Below are positions 6,459 through 26,136 of a stretch of 26,136 nt of DNA, piece by piece. How positions within the stretch are numbered: position 1 is the first letter of the stretch; every line of letters starts with the position of its first letter. This stretch comes from Octopus sinensis. Its lineage: Eukaryota. The notes under the pieces were generated by a model. The model did no database searches and was not told the DNA's origin. It saw nothing but the letters and a program-made list of their open reading frames with translations. Location of the stretch: positions 1 to 26,136 of the forward strand of contig NW_021835644.1 of assembly GCF_006345805.1 (NCBI RefSeq). Direction: 5' to 3'. The position numbers and the translations under genes are program-made.

Positions 6459-7377
6459 GGGACTGGCAATTGGAGTGCTGCCAGGCACTTCAGCTACTCT
6501 CTCGGGCGGGCAATGCCGAATTTCTATAGTGGGTTAGTGGAGGTTAAGTCCGAAGACGCCTTGGAGGAGACCCTGGGCTATGAGAAAAATCAGTTAATCA
6601 ACCTGTTCTGGAGAACTTTCGGGTCGAGGTATCTGGACAATTACCAGAAATCTCTGGCTTGGCAGTGCTTCTGTGTGGCGTTACCTGTTTGTGATAAACT
6701 GTCAAGGCACGGAAGTGCCGTCTAGCCGACATGTCTGAGGTGCGGGCAGAACAGGGAAACCGTCTTGCATGCATTTGTGGAGTGTCCGGAATTAACGAGA
6801 CTGATAGTTTTCGCAGAGCAACTGTTGTCATCGATGGGAAGAGTACAGCTATCAGCTGAATCTATCATCGAGATTGTGCCGCCTCCTTCCCTTAACAGGA
6901 AAAGGAAGGCTTGCTTATTCTGCATAGTAGCCATACTGAAAGAAACAGTATGGAAGACGCGTGTGAGAGGCATAGTGTTGGGTACCTTTGTATCCGGCTA
7001 GGGGTTGGTTAACTTTTTTAGTTACCACCTCAGTAATAAGATCAGGCTGGAGAAAAGGTACCTGTCACGAGACAGATTCATGAGAAGATGGAAGCCTGTG
7101 GCGAGGAAGCTGGGAGTGTTTGGCACCAGGTAAGTGGAAGCCAAAAACAGGAAAGAAAAAGCAATGGTGGTCGGATGCCTATCCTTCAGAGAAGCCATTA
7201 CAAATTTCATTTGTAATGAGCAACGCTTAAGTCAAAATTATAAACAAATTTATTAAATTATTGTATTTTTAAATTGTAAATATTTAATCACTATAGCTAC
7301 TTCACCCTTTTATGTTTGTCTGTTCTTGTTCGTCTTCTCTTTGTAATGCCTTCATGGCAAATATTTATGAAATAAAA
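6459..7377 (+). mobile_element. L1/Tx1-clade LINE, 5'-truncated 3' fragment (ORF2 C-terminus with zinc-binding motif, 3' UTR, AATAAA)
   Basis: One frame from 6513 to 7133 with two TAG stops: LAWQC...LPV.DKL.RHG...CLRCGQNRETVLHAFVEC...KETVWKTR...FMRRWK. This is the CxxC..H...C motif of the L1/Tx1 ORF2 tail. Ends ATGAAATAAAA. Confidence 0.8.
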
Positions 7378-7514
7378 TAGCTTGCTTCCCAACCACATGG
7401 ATCTGGGTTCAGTCCCACTCCGTGGCACCTTGGGCAAGTGTCTTCTATTATAGCCTCGGGCTGACCAAAGCCTTGTGTGTGAATTTGGTAGACGGAAACT
7501 GAAAGAAGCCCATC

Positions 7515-7568
<54 letters not shown>

Positions 7569-7757
7569 CTGTCCCTGCAACATCGCTTGAGAACCGATGC
7601 TAGTGTGTTTACGTCCCCGTAACTTATTGGTTCTGCAAAAGAGACCAATAGAATAAGTACTAGGCTTACAAAGAATAAGTCCTGGGGTCGATTTGCTCGA
7701 CTAAAGGCGGTGCTCCAGTGTGGCCACAGTAAAATAACTGAAACAAGTAAAAGTAAG
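7378..7757 (+). mobile_element. tRNA-derived SINE copy A, remainder, with internal (TA)n at ~7517-7558
   Basis: Resumes TAGCTTGCTTCCCAACCACATGG...GGTTCAGTCCC (B box) and is collinear with copies 12958-13350 and 20639-20987 to the CTGAAACAAGTAAAAG end. Confidence 0.92.
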
Positions 7758-10199
7758 TAGTACATTTGACAGAGAAATCTGAACTCTGAAGGGTTAAACT
7801 TTTTTATAAGGAAAAACAAAAAGAAACAACATGGATCATAACTTAGTTGATAACAAAATATTTTTGTAATATTTGAAATGGTATACATTCTGGAGTTTTT
7901 CCTGAAAATTTTATTAAAATTTGACCAAAATTGAAGGTGGGGTGTTTAATAGTTTGATATATTCTATTGTAATCAGCTGCACTAGTTTACCCCACATCCC
8001 TAGACCATCTCAGCAGTCCATGGACTAATATCATGTATGATTAACAACTCCTGTATATACACCATATTTAAGATTTTAGCTTTTTATCGCTCTGCTAGAG
8101 AACCCACTGAATGTTTTGAGTACCAATCACTTAAACTGAGTTAAGTGAACATAGGAGTTTAATCTGAAGAACTGTAAAGAATAGAAATGAGTTGAGAACA
8201 CCTGCCTATATATCAACTTCAAAAATATACTTTCAACCTTACTTTGCTAAAATCATATACAAATCTTGATACAATTTTGAGGAACTGTTTAGCTTCAGAA
8301 GTGTACTAGTTATTCAGCATCAATCAAATTACTACGTGAAATCGTCTGAAGATTAACAAAGTCAAGGTACAGTTGTTATTAGTTATGAATGTATATTGTT
8401 AGGTCTCTCTAGAAAAAGATAGTCTCATGTTCTGTTTTTTGGCACAAACTGCCTCTTATTCAAGCTAAACATAAGCTAAATTAATTTCACAAAAAAATTG
8501 ACTAAGGTGGTGTCTGCATTGATGTAGATACTATTATCCTTATTACTCCTCTTTCTCAACTGGATATCAATTAGTTAGAGGATAATAATTAGTTTCATTT
8601 TATACTATGTTCTTTCATTCTTTGTGATTTGTTTAGTGAATTTCTTCAAATTTTTTTTTCCTTCAATTTTCAAGCATCATGAGAACCTCATTTTATACCA
8701 TGTGTTTTATTTTTTGTTTTATCAATTGGATATCCTTTGATTCTTTTCTTCCTTCAATATTTGAGTACCATAGCAGTTAATACCTCAATTGGTGAGTTAG
8801 AATATGCTGATGTTATATATTAACAATTTACTTGTCATTATTTTATTAATAGATAAAAGAGAGCTTGGAGAAAATAATTAAAGTGATATTTCTGTGTCAT
8901 TTGTATTCACAAGTGATATAAAGTGGTATTAGGATTTGTTGATTCTGAGCAATAGGTGATCATGTAATTGATCATCTCATCAATGTTTCCATAAGTGATG
9001 TGAGCCCTACAAAACTTTTGAATATGAATCCGAAGCCCATTAAGTAGTTTCTTCAATTTTTCTTGAAAAACTGTTTGTCTAGAATGAGTGATCCCAAGGT
9101 ATGCACATCATAAGGAGAAGTAGGACTTTCTCAGAATGCTTTTCCTGATTATAGTTGTGCAGCTTCTAAGTTAGAGTGACTACTAGAACATATATTCATT
9201 TCTGAGATATGAAACTGATGCACAAGAATTGATATTTTGTAAATATATGCGAAAATATCTATACGTAATCAACCCACCCATATTCATCCTACATGGGCAG
9301 GTGAAAGTGATATATCATCAGGCAAAAAATCAACAACAGCAACCATTACATCGTATCATATCAGCAAGTTTCAGCCGAATTCTTGCAATTGTTATATTTT
9401 CATGATTTTTATTATGGACTAACTGCATTTCATTAAAATTTCTATTTTCCAACAATATTGGAAGAGAAAGTGCTTTGGAAATTTAAGAGTCAAATCATAT
9501 TTATCTTGAGCTCTTTCCAATGTTTTCATATTCATTGATATTAACACTCACAAGATTTTGTGGCTCTTGCAATCGCCCCATATTGATATAGCTAGTTCAG
9601 AAACTGAATCATTTATGTTATCTGTTTGCATCATCTGGTCTCATTCCTTACATGTACCCCACACTGACAACTTTAATATCTTTCTCATCTTCGACTTTGA
9701 TATCTTTCTCACTTATCAAACACTAACTGTCTGTACCCATAAAGTCTTTGCAACTACACAATGCACATCTATATATGATATAGTACTCCTGCACCCTATG
9801 GCAATTCAGGATAGCCACCTCTACCAGTTTTGTCAACTTTTGCAGGTGGCATATGTGCTTCACTCTTCAGCTATCTTATACCACTGGACATGTAACTGAA
9901 GCTGTCTGTTTAGGCATGTCCCACATCCAAGAAAAACTCAATACCTAAGTGGTTTTCTCATAGCTGTGTTGAAGCTTTTCAGGCAAGTAACAAAAACAAA
10001 GTGTACAACATCTCAAGGAACATCCACCTATAAAACAAGAGCAGCATTTTGCTAGCAAGAAACTTGCATGAAAGAACACATAAGTCTCTGACTTATTCTC
10101 TATCTCCTTGCTACTATTTCATTTTTGTTGTTTTCTATTTCATTTGTGATTTACAAATAATTATATAAATTTATGGAAGTTTTATTCTTTTAATTGTAG

Positions 10200-10432: not shown

Positions 10433-10600
10433 CAGGCATTTTGTGGTTGAGAAGTTTGCTTCTCATGTAGTATCAGGTTCAGTCACACTGTTCAGCACCT
10501 TGGGCAAATGAATTCTACTGTTTCTCCTGACTAAACAAAGCTTTGTGAGTGAATTTGGTAGACATAAGATGGAAGAAGCCCATCGTATACGTGTGTGTTT
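10433..10600 (+). mobile_element. tRNA-derived SINE copy B, old and degenerate, 5' part only
   Basis: GGTTCAGTCAC...GCACCTTGGGCAA...AAAGCTTTGTGAGTGAATTTGGTAGAC...GAAGCCCATCGTATA aligns to the SINE body. Confidence 0.75.
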
Positions 10601-12400: not shown

Positions 12401-12957
12401 TGACTAGAAATTTGCATTCAGGTTACTGCTATTCTGTTTGGAGATAGAATTCATCTGGGGAAGGAGAATGTTTAAATACTTGTTGACTGAATTTTCATGC
12501 ATGTAGGCAGGAATCAAATGTCTCCTGACTTGTTTAGGAGGTTTGTTGCAGATAGGATATGCAGTTTTTCAGTTACTCACAGATTACATCTTTTGCCATG
12601 ACCATTATAGGTATTTGCTTTAGCTTAAATGCTCCTGGTGGGGTTGCTAGTTTAGTTGCTGACGACCAGACCATGGAACAGGTTATACTGGGCTACATGG
12701 TATCAGTAGCACTCGAGAGTGACTTGACTAATGTCAGGTCGCTCTCGAGTGACCTTGGTGAGGTGGGTGCTTGTTGAACACCCTATGGGACAAAAAGTAA
12801 GACCTGTCAAAGGGCAGAGGAACTGCAGTGTAGTCAATGGCCAGTCAACTATGTGTGTTTGTGGAGTGCTTGTGTATTGTGTATGTTGCATTTTGGACTC
12901 TGTGTGTGTGTATTGTATATACTGTGTTCTTTTTTTTTTTTTAATTGTATATATATA

Positions 12958-13350
12958 GGCGCAGGAGTGGCCGTCTGGTAAGTAGCCTGCTAACCAACCA
13001 CATGGTTCCGGGTTCAGTCCCACTGCGTGGCATCTTGGGCAAGTGTCTTCTGCTATAGCCCCGGGCCGACCAACGCCTTGTGAGTGGATTTGGTAGATGG
13101 AAACTGAAAGAAGCCTGTCGTATATATGTATATATATATATATATGTATGCGTGTGTGTGTTTGTCCCCCTAGCATTGCTTGACAACCGATGCCGGTGTG
13201 TTTACGTCTCCGTCACTTAGCGGTTCGGCAAAAGAGACCGATAGAATAAGTACTGGGCATACAAAGAATAAGTCTCGGGGTCGATTTGCGTGACTAAAGG
13301 CGGTGCTCCAGCATGGCCGCAGTCAAATGACTGAAACAAGTAAAAGAGAG
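12958..13350 (+). mobile_element. tRNA-derived SINE copy C, full length (octopus-type; family name needs Dfam/Repbase)
   Basis: A-box-like TGGCCGTCTGG, B-box-like GGTTCAGTCCC, CCTTGGGCAAG-type core, internal (TA)n/(TG)n, GTCGATTTGCGTGAC hairpin remnant, and a LINE-like 3' tail ending TAAAAGAG. Confidence 0.93.
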
Positions 13351-13479
13351 AATATATCGTATGGGCAGTGAGCAGGTCCTTCTGGTCCTGTACAGGTAGT
13401 GAGACGTCCCCGCCCTCCAAGAGTCTTCTGTTGACTTGCAGGTAAGTTTTTTTGGTTAATCAAAAGCTAGGGAGTAAAC

Positions 13480-17725: not shown

Positions 17726-18254
17726 AGGCATAACTACAAACTTCTGCCATCTCTGAATTTGGATGATCATAACTTTCAGAAAAACGGATATTTTTTAGTG
17801 AAATTTTCTAGAAATATGTGTTACATCATCATGTAGATTCTGAATATACAAAATTTTGGAGGGAAGTGTTTTAGAAGGGGTGGGGTGGAGAATTTCGGAA
17901 AATTCATCTGAGTTCACTTCAGTTCATGTTAGCTTTCAAGAAAATGGTTATTTTTAATGAAATCCTCTACAAATATACCTCAGACTATGTAGATACCAAG
18001 GACATAGGAATTTTTTAGGGAAAATTGGGGGAAAAGTTCTCAGAAAGAACCCCTAATTGGGGAACAGTTCTCAAAAATAACCCCCAATTGTTTTCCCCCC
18101 AAATTCCTATGTCCTTGGAATCTATATAGTCCGAGGTATATTTGTAGAGTAACCCCTCCCCCCATTATTTGTAGAAAATTTCATTAAAAAATATCCATTT
18201 TTCTGAAAGTTATGATCGTCCAAAGTTGGAAGGACAGAAATCTGTAGTTATGCC
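17726..18254. mobile_element. Foldback MITE with ~85-bp imperfect terminal inverted repeats and 8-bp flanking direct repeat (hAT-like TSD)
   Basis: GGCATAACTAC...GATCATAACTTTCAGAAAAA...AAATTTTCTA (17727-~17812) is inverted at ~18168-18254. CACTACTC flanks both ends (17718-17725 and 18255-18262). Confidence 0.75.
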
Positions 18255-19145: not shown

Positions 19146-19260
19146 ACTTTCTCACTTATAGAGTGTTAAACTAATAGACCTGTTTGTTGTTTTCACACCT
19201 GTCTTTGTCTTTTGTTTTTTTTGTAAATTCCAACTATGTATGTATATACATGTATATGTA

Positions 19261-19452
19261 AGTGTGTCTGTGTTTGCCCCCCTCCCCACCATCACTTGAC
19301 AACCGATGTTGGTGTGTTTACGTCCCTGTTTGGCAAAAGAGACTGCTAGAATAAGTACTAGTCTTACAAAGAATAAGTCTTGGTGTTGATTTGTTCGACT
19401 AAAAGTGATGGTCCAGCATGGCTGCAGTCAAATGACTGAAACAAGTAAAAGA
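19261..19452 (+). mobile_element. tRNA-derived SINE copy D, 3' half only
   Basis: CTTGACAACCGATGTTGGTGTGTTTACGTCCC...AGAATAAGTACTAG...CAGTCAAATGACTGAAACAAGTAAAAGA matches the SINE 3' half. Confidence 0.88.
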
Positions 19453-20638
19453 ATATATATATATATGTTTGGCCAACCATCTTTCTACATTTAAATATAT
19501 TCATGAATGTAATACTACAGATCTTAGTCAACTAATTTGACATCTGAAAGACTATAATAAACAATTTTCTTTAGATTGAGAAATTTTGTCAACATCATTT
19601 CCCTATGATAAAGGGAAATCTTTTGGGTTTTGTTGTACGGACGATCAACTATTTATCCTTTTTCCCAAACATGCACTGGTCAACACCTATAAAGAACATG
19701 TTTACAGGTGTTTACATTGGTAAAAACACATTTTCAGCTATTTCAAATAATATCTGCCCCCTTACCTAATATTATCTGTAATATACACTTTTTGCTTCTC
19801 ATTCCATACCCCCTATTCTTTCCTTTATCTTTTCTATCCATTTGTCATTCACCCTGTATTTGTTTATACCACTGTTACTCCTCTAATTCTCTTTCTCTCC
19901 TTCTTCTCTTCTTCTTTGACGTCAAATTTCTTAAGTTTTTTCAAATTACTAGCGTTCCCTATCCACTTTTGTTTTCCATATATATTATAGTTTCTTGCAT
20001 CTGTAAAAATGACTTATTGGTGAGCTCTGTTGTTTATAATCTCTTCCTTGATGAAATTGATACATTTTTCCACATTATTCTTCCTCTCAGATTTATTTTA
20101 ATGTATCAGTCAAAACATATGTCGGTGATATGGTGAATTATCACCCATGCAAGTGGAATTACTAATTTTGTAGTCGCTTATGTGACATTTCGGTCCCCTG
20201 GTAAATATTCCTCTGAATCTTTCCTTGTAAATTAAACATTTATATATGTATATGTGTGTGTGTGTGTATGTATGTATACCTATATAGAAATGAGAATGTG
20301 CCTCTGTCTGTCTGTGAATCCCTAATACTCAAGAACTACACAACTGATTTCATTCAAATTTTACACATGCCAGTGTCATGGGCTAAAACAATTTTCAACT
20401 TCTTGCATAATGCGAGCCCAGAGCAGTCTCTTATCTCTTACACTATTTCAGTATTACGTGTCAAACGGGAAACAATAACATCTCTACATTGTAATGTGTG
20501 ATACTTTCAGTTTAATACTTTCACTATTAATAGTAAAACTATTAATGAAACTATTATCTCATATATATCTCACATGTATATACATACATACATACATACA
20601 TACATGTATATTATATATATATATTATGTACGTATATA

Positions 20639-20987
20639 GGTGCAGAAGTGTCTGTGTGGTAAGTAGCTTGCTTACCAACCACATGGTTCCGAGTTCAGTC
20701 CCACTGTGTGGCACCTTGGGCAAGTGTCTTCTGCAATAGCCTTGGACCGAACAAAACCTTGTGAGTGGATTTGCTAGACGGTAATTGAAAGACACCTGTC
20801 GTATATATATGTGTATGTGTGTTGGTGTGTTTACGTCCCTGTAACGTAGCAGTTTGGCAAAAGAGACCGATAGAATAAGTATTAGGCTTACAAAGAATAA
20901 GTCCCAGGGTTGATTTGTTTGAATAAAAAGGCATGCTCCAGCATGGCCACAGTCAAATGACTGAAACAAATAAAAGAATAAAAAAGA
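20639..20987 (+). mobile_element. tRNA-derived SINE copy E, near full length with an internal deletion
   Basis: GGTGCAGAAGTGTCTGTGTGGTAAGTAGCTTGCTTACCAACCACATGG... to CAGTCAAATGACTGAAACAAATAAAAGAATAAAA. Confidence 0.92.
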
Positions 20988-21021: not shown

Positions 21022-21784
21022 GTTTACATACATAAGAGAACAAGATGTACGTTACGCCGCAATAATATATGTATAAAAAGTATATATAAAAATACAAAAT
21101 GGCACAAGAACGCAAAACACTCAAAGAAACGACACAAGAAATGGACGGGTCATTCGAAGCCTCTAATCTTCAGTCAAGAACCGCATCATCCTTGCAATTT
21201 CGACTGATTAATCTTGAGATCGCTCCGATCCGGCCAGCCTCAAGGAAAAAACTAAGCTACGAGCATTAGATTTCTTGGAAAAAGGATCAAATGTATATGA
21301 AGCAAGGACAGAAAACGGATGATGCCACACGAATATAAATACAAAAAACAATAATAGTAATAACAGGACGAAAACAGCAGGTGCCTTACGACTTTAGATA
21401 GTTCAACTTAGCTTAGCTGGCGTATTTGGAAAAAAATGCCTTTTTCGGCAGACAAAGAAATCGATGTTGTCGTAGCGGTGGTCAGAAGCCAAAAGCTAGT
21501 TGACTGGCGGTCACGTGAGAGGAGAAGAGAGAGAAAAAAGGAGGCAAAGGAATCAAAGAGAGAGAGAAAAAAAGAGGGACAAAGGCACCAAAGGGGAAAG
21601 AAGAGAGAGAAAGAAGGAATTAAAGAGGGGAGAAGAAAGAGAGCGTGCCAAGGATTGGCTTGGCGACAGAATCAGTGTGGTGCAAAGTGAGAAAGACAGA
21701 GAAATGTGAGAGAGTGGGGGAGGAGGAGATCAAAGAATCAGAGGTGAGAAAAGAGAAAGACAGAGACTAGTGAAGTATAGAGAA

Positions 21785-22569: not shown

Positions 22570-22860
22570 TCAATTGTTATTATTATTTTTATTGTTAAAG
22601 TGAAAGTATCTGACATAAAATAGAGAAATGTTTTTGTTTTACTTTTAACACATAATACTGAAATAGTGGAGAAGATATGATATTGCTATGGGCTCGCTCT
22701 CGGCAAGAAGTGGGACATTTTTTTTGCCCATTGTAACTACATGGACCCTAAGTAAGGCATGTGTAAAATTTGAATGAAATTGGTTGTGTAGTTCTCAAGT
22801 TTTAGGGAAACACACAGACAGACACACACACACACATTCTCAGTTTTATATATATAAAGA
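22570..22860 (-). mobile_element. Second Helitron-like copy, 5' part, inverted relative to 20279-20545
   Basis: Minus strand begins A|TCTTTATATATATAAAACTGAGAATGTGTG..CTGTCTGTG..GAGAACTACACAACCAATTTCATTCAAATTTTACACATGCC, collinear with 20285-20545. An A|TC start fits Helitron 5' termini. The 3' end was not located. Confidence 0.65.
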
Positions 22861-22929: not shown

Positions 22930-23335
22930 TAGAGTGACCCGCTGTTCTTGAGGAGACGTACTGAGTCAAGTACGTGAACATAAAAAAAAAATCAAATGGA
23001 AATTGTAGTTAAGATACCCGTGCTGGTGACACATAAAAAGCACCGTCCAAACGTGGCAGATGCCAGCGCTGCCTGACTGGCGTCCATGTCGGTGATACGT
23101 AAAACCACCAATCGATCGTGGCCATTTGTCAGTCTCCCTCTGGCCACTGTGCTGGTGGCACGTAAAAAACACTCACTACACTCACGGAGTGGTTGGCGTT
23201 AGGAAGGGCATCCAAGTGTAGAAACACTGCCAGATCAGACTGGAGCCTGGTGCAGCCTACTGGCTTCTCAGGCCCCAGTCGCACTGTCCAACCCATGCTA
23301 GCATGGAAAACGGACATTAAACGATGATGATGTAT
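22930..23335 (+). mobile_element. 3' UTR/tail of an RTE-type LINE or RTE-derived non-autonomous element
   Basis: Three ~60-nt-spaced repeats of GTGCTGGTG(G/A)CAC(G/A)TAAAAAGCAC-like sequence, GGTTGGCGTTAGGAAGGGCATCC, and a terminal ATTAAACGATGATGATG ((GAT)n tail typical of RTE). Confidence 0.7.
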
Positions 23336-23468: not shown

Positions 23469-26136
23469 TTTATTTTATTTTATTTTATCTAGTTTCAGCT
23501 CACGAGCTGTGGCCATGCTGGGGCACCGCCATTTGGTGTTGCTACATGATTTTACTTCACGAATGCTTTTTAGCAATTGCTATTTGGTGCATGAGAGAGT
23601 TCGATGCACCTCCTGCCGTGAATTTGTTCATATTGGTCACCTGACAGGAAAAGATCCAGTTTTATTTTAAAGACATCTGCATCCACCCCATGCAGGTTTC
23701 TCAGGTCTTTCGAGAGGATATTGAAGAGCTGTGGGCCTCAAGCCCAGGCTATCACTTGTCCTACATCTTGATGGCAAATTTGGAGTCCTTGGCACTATGC
23801 AGTGGCACCCAAATTTAGTATTTGTGTAACTCTCGATGCCAAAGTTTGGGACAAGTCCTTCCAGGATCTTCCAGATGTATATTATGGCAGATCTTTCTCG
23901 CCTACGCTCTAAGGAATAGAGTCTTAATCTCTTGAGTCTTTCCCTGTAGCTTATATGCTGCACAGAGGCTATCTTGTTTATGTAACTTTGTTGGATCGCC
24001 TCAAGTTCTGTGATTAACTTGACACTGGATGGTGACCATAGCTGAGAGCAATAGTCAAAGTGGCTTCGGACAAGTGTCCTCCAGAGGACCCTCATGGTTT
24101 CCTGGTCTCTTGTTCTAAAGGTTCTAAGAATCCATCCGTCAGACGCCTACATTTCATTGCTAATTTAGTAACATGCACATGAAAGGTTGCATCATCACTC
24201 ATGTAAATACCCAGGTCTCGCACTAATTGTGCCTCTGGGATCGCAATCCCTGCTGGTCCAGTGTATTTATTGGGTATTGCATTTAGTTTTGCATGCTGAT
24301 AGCACAAAGCTTGAAACTTTTCAGCATTGAACTGCATGCTATTCTTTTCAGCCCACTTGTATATTTTGTCCAGCTCACATTGCAGGTGCATAGTGTCTTC
24401 AGGGTTCTGTATTACCTGTGAAACTTTTGTATCATCTGCATAACTTGTGATCGTGGCTCTCTGCGTGGCTGAGGGTATGTCTGAGAAGGCCATTATGAAC
24501 AGTAGTGGTCCCAAAACAGTGCCTTGTGGAACACCGCTCACTATTTGCGTGCTAATGGAAGTGACCCCATTGGCTACTACCACCTGACTTCTATCCTTCA
24601 GAAAGTCATGAAGCCATTCTCCCAGTTTTCCAACTATGTTGAGATCACGCAGTTTGTGACATATCATTCCATGATCGACTTTATCAAAGGCCTTTGCAAA
24701 GTCGAGATATATCACTTCCACATTTGAGTGGTTGAGCAGTCGTTTCAGCACCCAGTCATTGTGTTGTAGGAGCTGAGTTAAGCAGTTTCTCCCTGGTCGG
24801 AAACCATGTTAGGTGTCAGGCAGCAAGTCATTTTCTTCAAGGAAGGTGATTAGTTTCCTTCTGACTATTCGTTCCATGACCTTGCTGATGTGTGAGGTGA
24901 GAGAGATAGGTCTGTAGTTCTTGGCCTCTGCTCTTCTACCTCCTTTATGAATAAGGCATATTTTACCTTCCTTCAGTTTTCTTGGAAGTTTGCCAGCTGC
25001 AAGGAAGCTCTGAAAGAGGAACTGCAGTGGTCTTGCTAGGACTCTCTTACATACTTTTAGAATGATTCCTGGGAATTTATTGGGGCCAGTTGTTGAGTTT
25101 ATTTTCATTTCATCTATAGCCTTTATTACATCGTCTTCCCTTATATTGATGTAATCAATCATTGCTACCTCTGATTTTATATCTGCTGTAGTAAAGAAGT
25201 CAGTGGGATTGCTGACTTGAAAATACCATAGAGGTGGAGTGAAAATACTCTTGAATTGCTCATTGGATTTCCTGTGAGTGTACCATCTTTTTCAAGGAGT
25301 GGCCCTATCCTACGGTGCACCGTAGCTGTTTCTTTGGCATACCCGTAGAAAGCTCTGGGGTTAGATTTTTTGTTGTCTATAGCCCAGGCTTCTTTGTCTG
25401 CTCTTTCCTTTTCATGGGAGAGTTGCAGACATTTTTCAATTTCCAACAGTTTTATTTTCTGGCAGAACTTTTCACTGCTTTCAATTTGTTTGTTTAGGTG
25501 ATTTGAAATTTTTGTACACCGTCTCATTAAAATTTTCCTCTCTCTGGGGATTTTGTTCTTGTGTACAGTGGCCTTTCTCTCTGGGACACATTTGTAGCAT
25601 ATGGCTTGCATTACAGACATGAATTGTTGAAGCTTCACATCGATGTCTGGCGAGGAGAGACATTTAGGCCAGTTTTGTTTGAGGATCTCTTTCTCAATTT
25701 GTTTCGAGTTTGCCTTATGGAAGTTCAAGCTGGAAAGATTCTGAGGGTTTCTTGTAGGCTGCATGTCCATGCTTTCCTTTGGCCCGTACATGGTCAGCTC
25801 TACCATGTTGTGATCCGAGAGTAGTGTCGGTGTCACTTTCACATTATGGATGAGATCCATATTATTTGTGAAGCAGAGATCCAGTGTGTTACCTGCCCTG
25901 GTTGGTTGGAGTATTACTTGCTCCATGTACAGGGTATTGATGAGGTTCAGGAGGGACCTTGCCTGTCCTCGTTCACATCTTGTCATTCCTGGGAGAGAAA
26001 GGCCCTCGGGCCATCTGATATTGGGTAGATTGAAGTCTCCCATAGAAGTACACTTATGTGTTGTTCTAATGTGATTAGAACTTCTTCTATTTTATAAGGC
26101 AGTCTTCAAACTTGCTTACATGGCTGGGGCATCTGG
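23469..26136 (-). mobile_element. CR1-group (Jockey superfamily) LINE: ORF2 from APE C-terminus through RT to 3' UTR and (TAAAA)n tail; continues beyond the window
   Basis: MGDFNLPNIRW, GNTLDLCFTN (APE); NYRPISLTSHISKVMERIV, YLDFAKAFDKVDHG, GVPQGTVLGPLLF, YADD (RT); YSLERRRER (C-terminus). Long ORFs 25177-26043, 24809-25162, 24092-24751 and 23667-24095 are broken by a few stops and frameshifts. Confidence 0.95.

What the first reader, a model, noticed from the sequence alone, without database searches (positions are those of the whole stretch)
23469..23530. SINE and CR1-group LINE share a 3' tail with compensatory changes in a terminal stem-loop
Seen: 26 nt after the inferred ORF2 stop, the LINE ends GGCGGTGCCCCAGCATGGCCACAGCTCGTGAGCTGAAACTAGA(TAAAA)n. 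SINE copy C ends GGCGGTGCTCCAGCATGGCCGCAGTCAAATGACTGAAACAAGTAAAAGA (13299-), giving 22/24 identity in the first block. Both then form a 5-bp stem with 4-nt loop: CAGCT-cgtg-AGCTG in the LINE, CAGTC-aaat-GACTG in SINE copies C, D and E. Two base pairs are swapped but pairing is kept. Established: stringent-type LINEs (L2/CR1 group, e.g. eel UnaL2/UnaSINE) recognise a 3' stem-loop shared with partner SINEs. Inference: this identifies the LINE lineage that mobilises the dominant SINE here and pinpoints the RT-recognition element. The true partner may be a sister subfamily with the AAAT loop. Whether the pairing is already published needs checking.
Basis: partly seen in the sequence, partly recalled or inferred. 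Interest (0 to 1): 0.7.

Follow-up and report, generated by a model that had tools for sequence, protein, structure and literature searches.

The report
Octopus SINE and LINE share 3' tail
A decayed octopus LINE and the common SINE around it end in the same about 40-base two-hairpin RNA module, which is native to a whole group of octopod LINEs, so this is a well-supported new example of a known way that SINEs borrow a LINE's copying machinery.

Summary
On the minus strand, 23530-23488 reads GGCGGTGCCCCAGCATGGCCACAGCTCGTGAGCTGAAACTAGA, followed by (TAAAA)n. It lies 26 nt after the homology-supported ORF2 stop of a frameshifted EEP+RT LINE. Four SINE copies in the window end in the same module.

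Seven other LINE copies, at 58-73% protein identity and including two from the Argonauta hians genome, carry the same module 1-46 nt after ORF2. It is therefore native to the LINE and not an inserted SINE fragment.

- Hairpin 1 is GGY-G-GUGC[NCCA]GCAU-G-RCC. Its third pair covaries (C-G, U-G, U-A).
- Hairpin 2 is CAGCY[3-6 nt loop]RGCUG.
- An invariant AAAC and lineage-specific 5-8 nt repeats follow.

Of all pair cells, 96.5% are paired, and four pairs change on both sides. The module is 86% identical among the LINEs, against 64% for the adjacent coding sequence.

The window's LINE is the least SINE-like of the eight tails. L006, L008 and L003 are the closest, and none has the SINE's CAGUC-AAAU-GACUG hairpin. 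The family is identified, but the exact partner is not. Recognition by the reverse transcriptase is inferred, and the CR1 clade assignment is untested. This is a new member of a known kind.

The parts
23557..26043 (-). Decayed LINE ORF2 (apurinic-type endonuclease plus reverse transcriptase plus C-terminal domain). It has at least 4 frameshifts and 1 in-frame stop. The homology-supported stop is TGA at 23559-23557. The 5' part is missing or outside the window.
   Evidence: Pfam PF14529 and PF00078. Three-frame translation. tblastn of P0001 and P0003 covers 26043-23601 across frames -1, -3, -2, -3. The best homologues are octopod, from Argonauta hians.
23531..23556 (-). 26-nt linker between the ORF2 stop and the conserved tail module. 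It is not conserved among LINE lineages.
   Evidence: The 40 nt upstream of the module are on average 41% identical among 8 LINE copies, which is about random.
23511..23530 (-). Hairpin 1 of the LINE tail: GGC-G-GUGC[CCCA]GCAU-G-GCC. It has 3 bp, a G.G mismatch, 4 bp and a tetraloop.
   Evidence: Predicted in all 8 LINE tails and in the SINE. Pair 3-18 covaries as CG:6, UG:3, UA:2.
23496..23509 (-). Hairpin 2 of the LINE tail: CAGCU[CGUG]AGCUG.
   Evidence: The outer 3 bp are invariant. The 4th pair is C-G in the LINEs and U-A in the SINE. The 5th pair is U-A here and C-G in six of the other seven LINE tails (L001 has an unpaired C.C there) and in the SINE.
23488..23495 (-). Invariant AAAC followed by TAGA, between hairpin 2 and the terminal repeats.
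   Evidence: CTGAAAC is invariant in all 12 aligned tails.
23469..23487 (-). Terminal tandem repeat (TAAAA)n of the LINE. It runs into TA/CA microsatellite.
   Evidence: The other LINE lineages carry different 5-8 nt units at the same place.
12946..13357 (+). SINE copy C. The tail module is at 13299-13337 (hairpin 1 at 13299-13318, hairpin 2 at 13320-13333, AAAC at 13334-13337), followed by AAGTAAAAGAG.
   Evidence: It is the best hit of covariance model R1, at 68.3 bits.
7341..7764 (+). SINE copy with tail module at 7706-7744. Hairpin 2 has decayed to CAGUAAAAUAACUG.
19235..19462 (+). 5'-truncated SINE copy D, with tail module at 19404-19442.
20627..20986 (+). SINE copy E, with tail module at 20929-20967, followed by AAATAAAAGAATAAAAAAGAATA.

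Best explanation
The window comes from an octopod genome. On its minus strand lies a decayed, CR1-like LINE with an apurinic-type endonuclease and a reverse transcriptase. Its very short 3' UTR consists almost entirely of a conserved RNA module of about 40 nt:
- Hairpin 1: GGY-G-GUGC[NCCA]GCAU-G-RCC.
- One spacer base.
- Hairpin 2: CAGCY[variable 3-6 nt loop]RGCUG.
- An invariant AAAC.
- A lineage-specific 5-8 nt tandem repeat.

The module is native to a group of octopod LINE lineages and is under purifying selection for both sequence and pairing. The abundant SINE in this window carries the same module at its own 3' end. Its body looks CORE-like and its head has box A- and box B-like motifs.

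The most likely mechanism is the 'stringent' mode of LINE retrotransposition. The LINE ORF2 protein binds the hairpin module on its own RNA and primes reverse transcription on the terminal repeats. SINE RNA that carries the same module is copied in trans.

Shown here:
- The module is shared between LINE and SINE.
- It is native to the LINE.
- It is conserved, and its pairing is kept by compensatory changes.

Inferred:
- Binding by ORF2 protein and mobilisation in trans.
- That hairpin 1 (nearly invariant) gives general recognition and that the hairpin 2 loop (lineage-specific) gives cognate specificity.
- Which LINE lineage is the SINE's actual partner.
For: - Sequences and coordinates were verified. 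The shared block is not a chance match, with 0.00 expected in shuffles.
- The LINE has EEP and RT domains, and its closest proteins are from Argonauta hians.
- Seven further LINE copies carry the module 1-46 nt after the ORF2 stop: L001, L002, L003, L004, L006, L007 and L008. Their protein identity to the window copy is 58-73%. Each has its own terminal repeat unit.
- RNAfold gives the same two hairpins for all 8 LINE tails and the intact SINE tails, also within 80-100 nt of context.
- On alignment A2, 96.5% of pair cells are standard pairs, against 19-46% when partners are slid. Four pairs change on both sides. No shuffle out of 500 reached the observed covariation score.
- The module is on average 86% identical among the LINEs. 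The last 300 nt of ORF2 are 64% identical and the 40 nt just upstream are 41%.
- Covariance model R1 finds exactly 5 instances in the window, 4 in SINEs and 1 in the LINE, and one in each related LINE locus.
- Known precedents: UnaL2/UnaSINE tails (PMC1636434); ZfL2 ORF2 binding its cognate stem-loop, with the stem read generally and the loop specifically (PMC4176376); CR1-derived SINE tails with a hairpin plus 8-nt microsatellite (PMC5729268); a bivalve SINE paired with CR1 (PMC4758252).
Against:
- None of the 8 sampled LINE lineages has the SINE's hairpin 2 (CAGUC-AAAU-GACUG). The window's LINE is the least similar to the SINE tail, at 30/39.
- The window LINE's own U-A fifth pair rests on one decayed copy. 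Two chance transitions cannot be fully excluded for that single pair.
- The structure was derived from the same sequences on which it was counted, which inflates the contrast with the slid controls (caveat stated by the tool).
- ARAGORN and Rfam do not recognise the SINE head as a tRNA.
- Target-site duplications are not resolvable, because the flanks are TA repeats.
- CR1 clade membership was not tested phylogenetically.
Confidence: 0.75

Rival explanations
1. The shared sequence is an accident of this locus. A SINE, or a SINE 3' fragment, inserted at or next to the LINE's end, so the LINE family itself does not end in this tail.
For: Only one copy of this LINE is in the window. Retroelements are densely packed here, and another element lies tail-to-tail with the LINE.
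Against: - Seven independent LINE copies from other lineages and another genus end in the same module right after ORF2.
- The SINE-specific sequence upstream of the module (…GATTTGCTCGACTAAA) is absent from all the LINEs, whose upstream 40 nt are unrelated to one another.
Confidence: 0.02
2. The tail is LINE-derived, but the SINE is mobilised by a different, unsampled sister lineage that has the CAGUC-AAAU-GACUG hairpin, or by the L006, L008 or L002 types. The window's lineage plays no part in SINE amplification.
For: - The SINE tail is 34/39 identical to L006 (20/20 in hairpin 1, and the same U in the loop). It is 34/39 identical to L008, whose loop AUAU compares with the SINE's AAAU.
- It is only 30/39 identical to the window LINE.
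- The SINE's terminal AAGTAAAAGAG / AATAAAAGAATAAAA resembles L002's AGAGTAAAAGAG and L006's (TAAAAGAA)n, not the window's (TAAAA)n.
- In ZfL2 the loop is read specifically by the cognate ORF2 (PMC4176376).
Against: - No LINE with the SINE's hairpin 2 was found among the 8 sampled.
- The SINE may have evolved its own compensated stem while still being recognised through hairpin 1 and the conserved outer stem.
- Sampling is very thin.
Confidence: 0.5
3. The conserved two-hairpin module serves something other than template recognition by the reverse transcriptase. Candidates are 3'-end formation or stability of the transcript, or export or translation control. On this view the SINE keeps it as an inherited relic, or for RNA stability.
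For: Nothing here distinguishes binding by ORF2 from other RNA-level functions. Conservation and covariation only show that the folded RNA matters.
Against: - The position at the extreme 3' end, directly before short tandem repeats, is the layout shown experimentally to be the reverse-transcription initiation signal in stringent LINEs (PMC1636434, PMC4176376, PMC5729268).
- A non-autonomous element retaining exactly this module, and nothing else of the LINE, is what trans-mobilisation predicts.
Confidence: 0.1

Closest known systems
Eel UnaL2 / UnaSINE1 and zebrafish ZfL2 (L2-clade stringent LINEs and partner SINEs)
   Same: [quoted passage not shown]
- The stem is kept while its sequence can vary.
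- A non-canonical position inside a stem is conserved: G.G in hairpin 1 here, and a bulged C and U-U mismatch in UnaL2 (PMC1636434).
- Lineage-specific loops are present. In ZfL2 they are read by a variable tail-binding region (PMC4176376).
   Different: - There is no sequence similarity, and no Rfam family matched the tail at E<=1.
- Here there are two short adjacent hairpins instead of one long one.
- The ORF2 C-terminal motif looks CR1-like rather than L2-like (from memory, untested).
- There is no functional evidence here.
Amniote CR1 and CR1-mobilised SINEs (TguSINE1, PittSINE, tortoise Pol III/SINE)
   Same: - ORF2 has an apurinic-type endonuclease and a reverse transcriptase.
- The 3' UTR is very short, with a putative reverse-transcriptase-binding hairpin followed by a microsatellite of about 8 nt.
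- SINEs carry that tail (PMC5729268, PMC3747384).
   Different: - The microsatellite is not AUUCURUG. It is a lineage-specific A-rich unit of 5-8 nt.
- The hairpin sequences are different.
- There are two hairpins.
- The host is a cephalopod.
Bivalve Vhc_1 SINEs with CR1-1_CGi / CR1-14_CGi (Crassostrea gigas)
   Same: This is a mollusc SINE whose tail matches the 3' ends of CR1-clade LINEs, proposed as partners from sequence alone (PMC4758252).
   Different: The class (Bivalvia), the SINE superfamily (V domain) and the tail sequence all differ. No hairpin covariation was reported there for the tail.

Membership tests
Stringent-type SINE/LINE pair with a common 3' tail (Okada model) | The SINE 3' end is homologous to the 3' end of a LINE in the same genome. 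| tested here: met
   The LINE and SINE match at 22/24 in hairpin 1 plus the first three stem bases of hairpin 2, and at 30/39 over the module. Chance expectation is 0.00.
Stringent-type SINE/LINE pair with a common 3' tail (Okada model) | The tail is native to the LINE family, present directly after ORF2 in independent LINE copies. | tested here: met
   Seven other LINE copies, two of them from the Argonauta hians genome, carry it 1-46 nt after the ORF2 stop.
Stringent-type SINE/LINE pair with a common 3' tail (Okada model) | The tail folds into a stem-loop that is maintained by compensatory substitutions. | tested here: met
   Two hairpins appear in all tails. 96.5% of cells are paired, and 4 pairs change on both sides.
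Stringent-type SINE/LINE pair with a common 3' tail (Okada model) | The element ends in short tandem repeats rather than a plain poly(A). | tested here: met
   The repeat units are (TAAAA)n, (TTAAA)n, (TACAAGA)n, (TAAAACAT)n and (TAAAAGAA)n in the LINEs, and AAGTAAAAGA... in the SINE.
Stringent-type SINE/LINE pair with a common 3' tail (Okada model) | The SINE has a small-RNA-derived head with an internal pol III promoter. | tested here: inconclusive
   Box A-like (TGGCTGTGTGG) and box B-like (GGTTCAGTCCC) motifs can be read in the alignment. ARAGORN finds no tRNA, and Rfam gives no tRNA hit even at E<=10.
Stringent-type SINE/LINE pair with a common 3' tail (Okada model) | Mobilisation of the SINE by the LINE's ORF2 protein depends on the tail. 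| not testable with these tools
   This needs a retrotransposition or binding assay.
CR1 clade of non-LTR retrotransposons | ORF2 has an apurinic-type endonuclease followed by a reverse transcriptase. | tested here: met
   PF14529 at E 2.9e-07 and PF00078 at E 4e-19. Full-length relatives of 984-986 aa have PF03372, PF14529 and PF00078.
CR1 clade of non-LTR retrotransposons | The RT domain falls inside the CR1 clade in a phylogeny, as opposed to L2, Rex1, Jockey and others. | not tested
   No named reference LINE proteins are available in these tools. The only leads are the C-terminal motif ...SYRERLKRLRLYSLERRRERSAIIY..., which resembles CR1 from memory, and the fact that CR1 is listed among recently active O. 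vulgaris LINE groups, alongside RTE, Dong-R4, L1-Tx1, Hero and R2 (PMC13282606).
CR1 clade of non-LTR retrotransposons | The 3' UTR has a hairpin followed by a microsatellite of about 8 nt. | tested here: met
   The architecture is met. The amniote unit AUUCURUG is not present.
UnaL2-type LINE 3' element and other curated RNA families (Rfam 15) | The sequence matches the family covariance model. | tested here: not met
   cmscan of the whole window at E<=1 gives only low-complexity microRNA-like hits and nothing at 23469-23530 or at the SINE tails.
CORE-SINE superfamily | The SINE body contains the CORE domain. | not tested
   The body sequence CCTTGGGCAAGTGTCTTCT... resembles the CORE/MIR core from memory. 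No reference sequence could be obtained, because the SINEBase supplements are not held. The literature says octopus SINEs are mainly tRNA-Core and tRNA-Deu (PMC8967140).

The most novel reading that the evidence does not exclude
The module is a two-part address label. A nearly invariant hairpin 1, with its G.G mismatch, is read by all ORF2 proteins of this octopod LINE group. The hypervariable loop and inner pairs of hairpin 2 act as a lineage-specific code that keeps co-existing LINE lineages from copying each other's RNA. The SINE, which makes up roughly a tenth of octopus genomes, carries a hairpin 2 variant (CAGUC-AAAU-GACUG) seen in no sampled LINE. Either it is tied to one as yet unsampled LINE lineage, or it has evolved a 'master key' that several lineages accept. 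That could explain its exceptional success in octopods.
Probability: 0.25. Interest if true: 0.6.

Novelty: new member of a known kind. Interest (0 to 1): 0.42.

Why it matters
SINEs are the largest repeat class in Octopus genomes: about 11.6% of the O. vulgaris genome (PMC13282606) and about 40% of the transposable-element content (PMC8967140). They are enriched in brain transcripts (PMC9115989). No paper that could be searched here names the LINE that copies them.

Tying the SINE to a specific LINE group through a defined two-hairpin tail of about 40 nt has three uses:
- It gives a concrete, testable handle on how the octopod SINE expansion happened.
- It gives a marker for sorting the many 'unclassified SINE' families.
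- It provides an invertebrate system for comparing tail recognition with the fish L2 and amniote CR1 models.

The mechanism itself is textbook, so the gain is in annotation and in making the question testable, not in concept.

Tried and rejected
- Rfam scans of the whole window and of one SINE copy gave only TA/TG low-complexity microRNA-like hits. There was no LINE 3' element and no tRNA.
- ARAGORN found no tRNA.
- Exact-pattern scans for the tail found nothing in JGI metagenome contigs or IMG/VR viral contigs.
- An exact look-up of a window ORF, meant to identify the source assembly, returned no record.
- The target-site duplication search for SINE copies was inconclusive, because the flanks are TA repeats.
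- A search of paper texts for the tail sequences returned no papers.
- The SINEBase supplements are not held, and the Albertin 2015 paper is not held.
- Distant LINE relatives were checked (L005 from a Logan run, L009 from a crab, L010 from Clytia). They show a small hairpin and/or 7-9 nt repeats after ORF2 but not this module. The covariance model gives only non-significant hits at their ORF2 ends, at E 0.19 and 0.91, so the module as defined is octopod-specific on present sampling.
- My own first reading of the ORF2 stop, TAA at 23572-23570, was rejected after comparison with homologues.
Full report
**1. What is at the coordinates**

The finding lies on the minus strand. Read 5'->3', positions 23530-23488 are GGCGGTGCCCCAGCATGGCCACAGCTCGTGAGCTGAAACTAGA. 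Positions 23487-23469 are TAAAATAAAATAAAATAAA, which run into a TA/CA microsatellite.

Upstream on the same strand, from 26043 down to about 23557, lies a decayed LINE ORF2.
- Pfam finds the endonuclease-reverse transcriptase domain PF14529 and RVT_1 PF00078.
- tblastn with two homologues covers 26043-23601 in frames -1, -3, -2, -3. There is a further shift into the final frame and one in-frame stop.
- In the frame that matches the homologues' C-termini (...ASNSLMHQIAIAKKHS*), the stop is TGA at 23559-23557.
- My first reading, TAA at 23572-23570, was in a shifted frame.
- The best protein matches are from the octopod Argonauta hians and from unnamed metagenome contigs, at 58-73% identity. The window is therefore octopod DNA.

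**2. The SINE**

The repeat finder and an alignment show four copies of one SINE of about 400 nt, plus a head fragment at 10476-10589. The copies are at:
- 7341-7764
- 12946-13357
- 19235-19462, which is 5'-truncated
- 20627-20986

All four end in the tail:
- 13299-13337: GGCGGTGCTCCAGCATGGCCGCAGTCAAATGACTGAAAC
- 19404-19442 and 20929-20967: the same hairpin 2, with decayed 5' bases
- 7706-7744: a decayed stem

The 24-nt shared block is not a chance match. It gives 3 hits at up to 3 mismatches, against 0.00 expected.

**3. Is the tail native to the LINE?**

I fetched the DNA around seven related LINE ORF2 genes:
- L001, L002, L006, L007 and L008, from ENA metagenome assemblies
- L003 and L004, from the Argonauta hians genome

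Every one carries the module 1-46 nt after its ORF2 stop, and each is followed by its own short tandem repeat. The pattern is GGYGGTGCNCCAGCATGRCC-N-CAGC(C/T)-loop-(G/A)GCTGAAAC.

The sequence just upstream of the module is unrelated among the LINEs and unrelated to the SINE body. None of these is therefore a SINE insertion.

The module averages 86% identity among the eight LINEs, variable loop included. The last 300 nt of ORF2 average 64%, and the 40 nt immediately upstream average 41%. It is a sharply bounded conserved island.

**4. Structure**

RNAfold predicts the same two hairpins in all eight LINE tails and in the intact SINE tails. They persist as both MFE and centroid structures in 80-100 nt of context, with z-scores from -1.2 to -3.9.
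The two single G's face each other as a conserved G.G mismatch, and the only variable loop base is the first.

On alignment A2 (8 LINE and 4 SINE tails), the count of structure pairs gave the following:
- 96.5% of cells form standard pairs, against 19-46% when the partners are slid.
- Four pairs change on both sides.
- No shuffle out of 500 reached the observed covariation score.

The informative pairs are:
- Hairpin 1, pair 3-18: C-G in 6, U-G in 3, U-A in 2. The U-A state occurs in L004 and L008.
- Hairpin 2, pair 4: C-G in all LINEs and U-A in the SINE.
- Hairpin 2, pair 5: U-A in the window LINE and C-G elsewhere.

Three caveats apply:
- The structure was derived from these same sequences.
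- The sample is small.
- The window LINE's U-A pair rests on a single decayed copy.

A covariance model built from A2 finds exactly five instances in the window, four in SINEs and one in the LINE. It finds one instance in each related LINE locus.

**5. Which LINE is the partner?**

The SINE tail compares with the sampled LINE tails as follows:
- L006: 34/39, including 20/20 in hairpin 1.
- L008: 34/39. Its loop is AUAU, against AAAU in the SINE.
- L003: 34/41.
- Window LINE: 30/39, the lowest fraction of the eight.

The SINE's terminal AAGTAAAAGAG / AATAAAAGAATAAAA resembles L002's AGAGTAAAAGAG and L006's (TAAAAGAA)n rather than the window's (TAAAA)n. No sampled LINE has CAGUC-AAAU-GACUG.

So the LINE group is identified, but the mobilising lineage is not.

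**6. Mechanism**

The layout is a very short 3' UTR with a hairpin module and short tandem repeats, shared with a non-autonomous element. This is the layout of 'stringent' LINEs.
- For UnaL2, the shared tail and a mismatch and bulge in its stem are required for retrotransposition (PMC1636434).
- For ZfL2, the ORF2 region between the endonuclease and RT domains binds the cognate stem-loop. The stem is read generally and the loop specifically (PMC4176376).
- CR1-derived SINE tails in birds show a hairpin plus an 8-nt microsatellite (PMC5729268).

By analogy, I infer that ORF2 protein of this LINE group binds the two-hairpin module and primes on the repeats, and that SINE RNA is copied in trans. 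It is a hypothesis, not a result, that the invariant hairpin 1 gives general recognition and the variable hairpin 2 loop gives lineage specificity.

**7. Comparison with what is known, and novelty**

- The tail matches no Rfam family.
- 'CR1-group' is plausible from three lines: the domain architecture, a C-terminal motif recalled from memory, and the listing of CR1 among the recently active O. vulgaris LINE groups (PMC13282606). I could not run a phylogeny.
- Ohshima's 2013 table of SINE/LINE pairs contains no mollusc.
- A bivalve SINE/CR1 pair was proposed in 2016 (PMC4758252).
- Recent octopus repeat papers report tRNA-Core and tRNA-Deu SINEs, or largely unclassified ones, and name no partner.
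- No held paper contains the tail sequence.
- Repbase and Dfam could not be consulted, so the pair may already be catalogued there.

I rate it a new member of a known kind. It is solid and useful for annotating octopus repeats, and it makes the question of how the octopod SINE expansion was driven testable. It is not conceptually surprising.

**8. Dead ends**

- DNA scans of metagenome and viral collections for the tail found nothing.
- The source assembly could not be identified.
- The SINE head is not recognised as a tRNA by ARAGORN or Rfam.
- Target-site duplications are unresolved.
- Distant relatives from a crab, a hydrozoan and an unnamed Logan run show only the general layout of 'small hairpin and/or 7-9 nt repeats after ORF2', not this module.

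Noticed in passing
window 22990-23332 (+): This is the 3' end of a different retroelement, lying tail-to-tail with the LINE across about 150 nt of TA/CA microsatellite. It ends in a perfect palindromic hairpin, CCATGCTAGCATGG, then AAAAC, then GGACATTAAAC, then (GAT)n. The 'hairpin + AAAC + short repeat' layout is the same as in the LINE/SINE tail, but the sequence is different. It is a single copy in the window.
   Followed up: partly
window 23511-23530 (-) and columns 4/17 of alignment A2: Hairpin 1 of the tail has a G.G mismatch in the middle of its stem, conserved in all 8 LINE tails and in two of the four SINE copies (the other two are decayed). This recalls the mismatch and bulge 'hinge' that UnaL2 needs for retrotransposition (PMC1636434).
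   Followed up: partly
window 7516-7570, 13119-13160, 19235-19275: The SINE body contains an internal (TA)n/(TG)n microsatellite. Its length differs greatly between copies and it is nearly absent from the copy at 20627-20986. It produces spurious microRNA-like Rfam hits.
   Followed up: no
window 12990-13110 (SINE body) and the equivalent region of the other copies: The SINE body downstream of the box B-like motif (…CCTTGGGCAAGTGTCTTCTRCTATAGCC…) looks like the CORE domain of CORE-SINEs/MIR. This rests on memory only, since no reference sequence was available. The literature reports tRNA-Core SINEs as a main octopus class.
   Followed up: no
window 20289-20493 and 22616-22838: Two arms of about 200 nt are 78-80% complementary and lie 2.1 kb apart (I1/I2). 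They are probably two copies of another repeat family in opposite orientation. Similar short ORF translations occur on both arms.
   Followed up: no
window 17758-18224: There are nested near-perfect inverted repeats: 17758-17816 with 18166-18224 at 93%, and 17965-18013 with 18101-18149 at 94%. This suggests a foldback or MITE-like element (I3 and I6).
   Followed up: no
L005 3929-3990; L009 1290-1335; L010 1578-1620: Distant relatives of the LINE end ORF2 with a very short 3' UTR. They come from a Logan run (ERR10705273), the crab Petrolisthes cinctipes and the hydrozoan Clytia hemisphaerica. The first two have a small hairpin, and all three have 7-9 nt tandem repeats: (TGAAAGTA)n, (TATCAAG)n and (ATCAAAAGT)n. 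The general tail layout is therefore much older than the octopod-specific module.
   Followed up: partly
window 21436-21709 (+): There are overlapping ORFs of 69-84 aa made of Arg/Lys/Glu-rich low-complexity sequence (…RERRRERKKEAKESKRERKKEG…) from a purine-rich stretch. This is probably not a gene.
   Followed up: no
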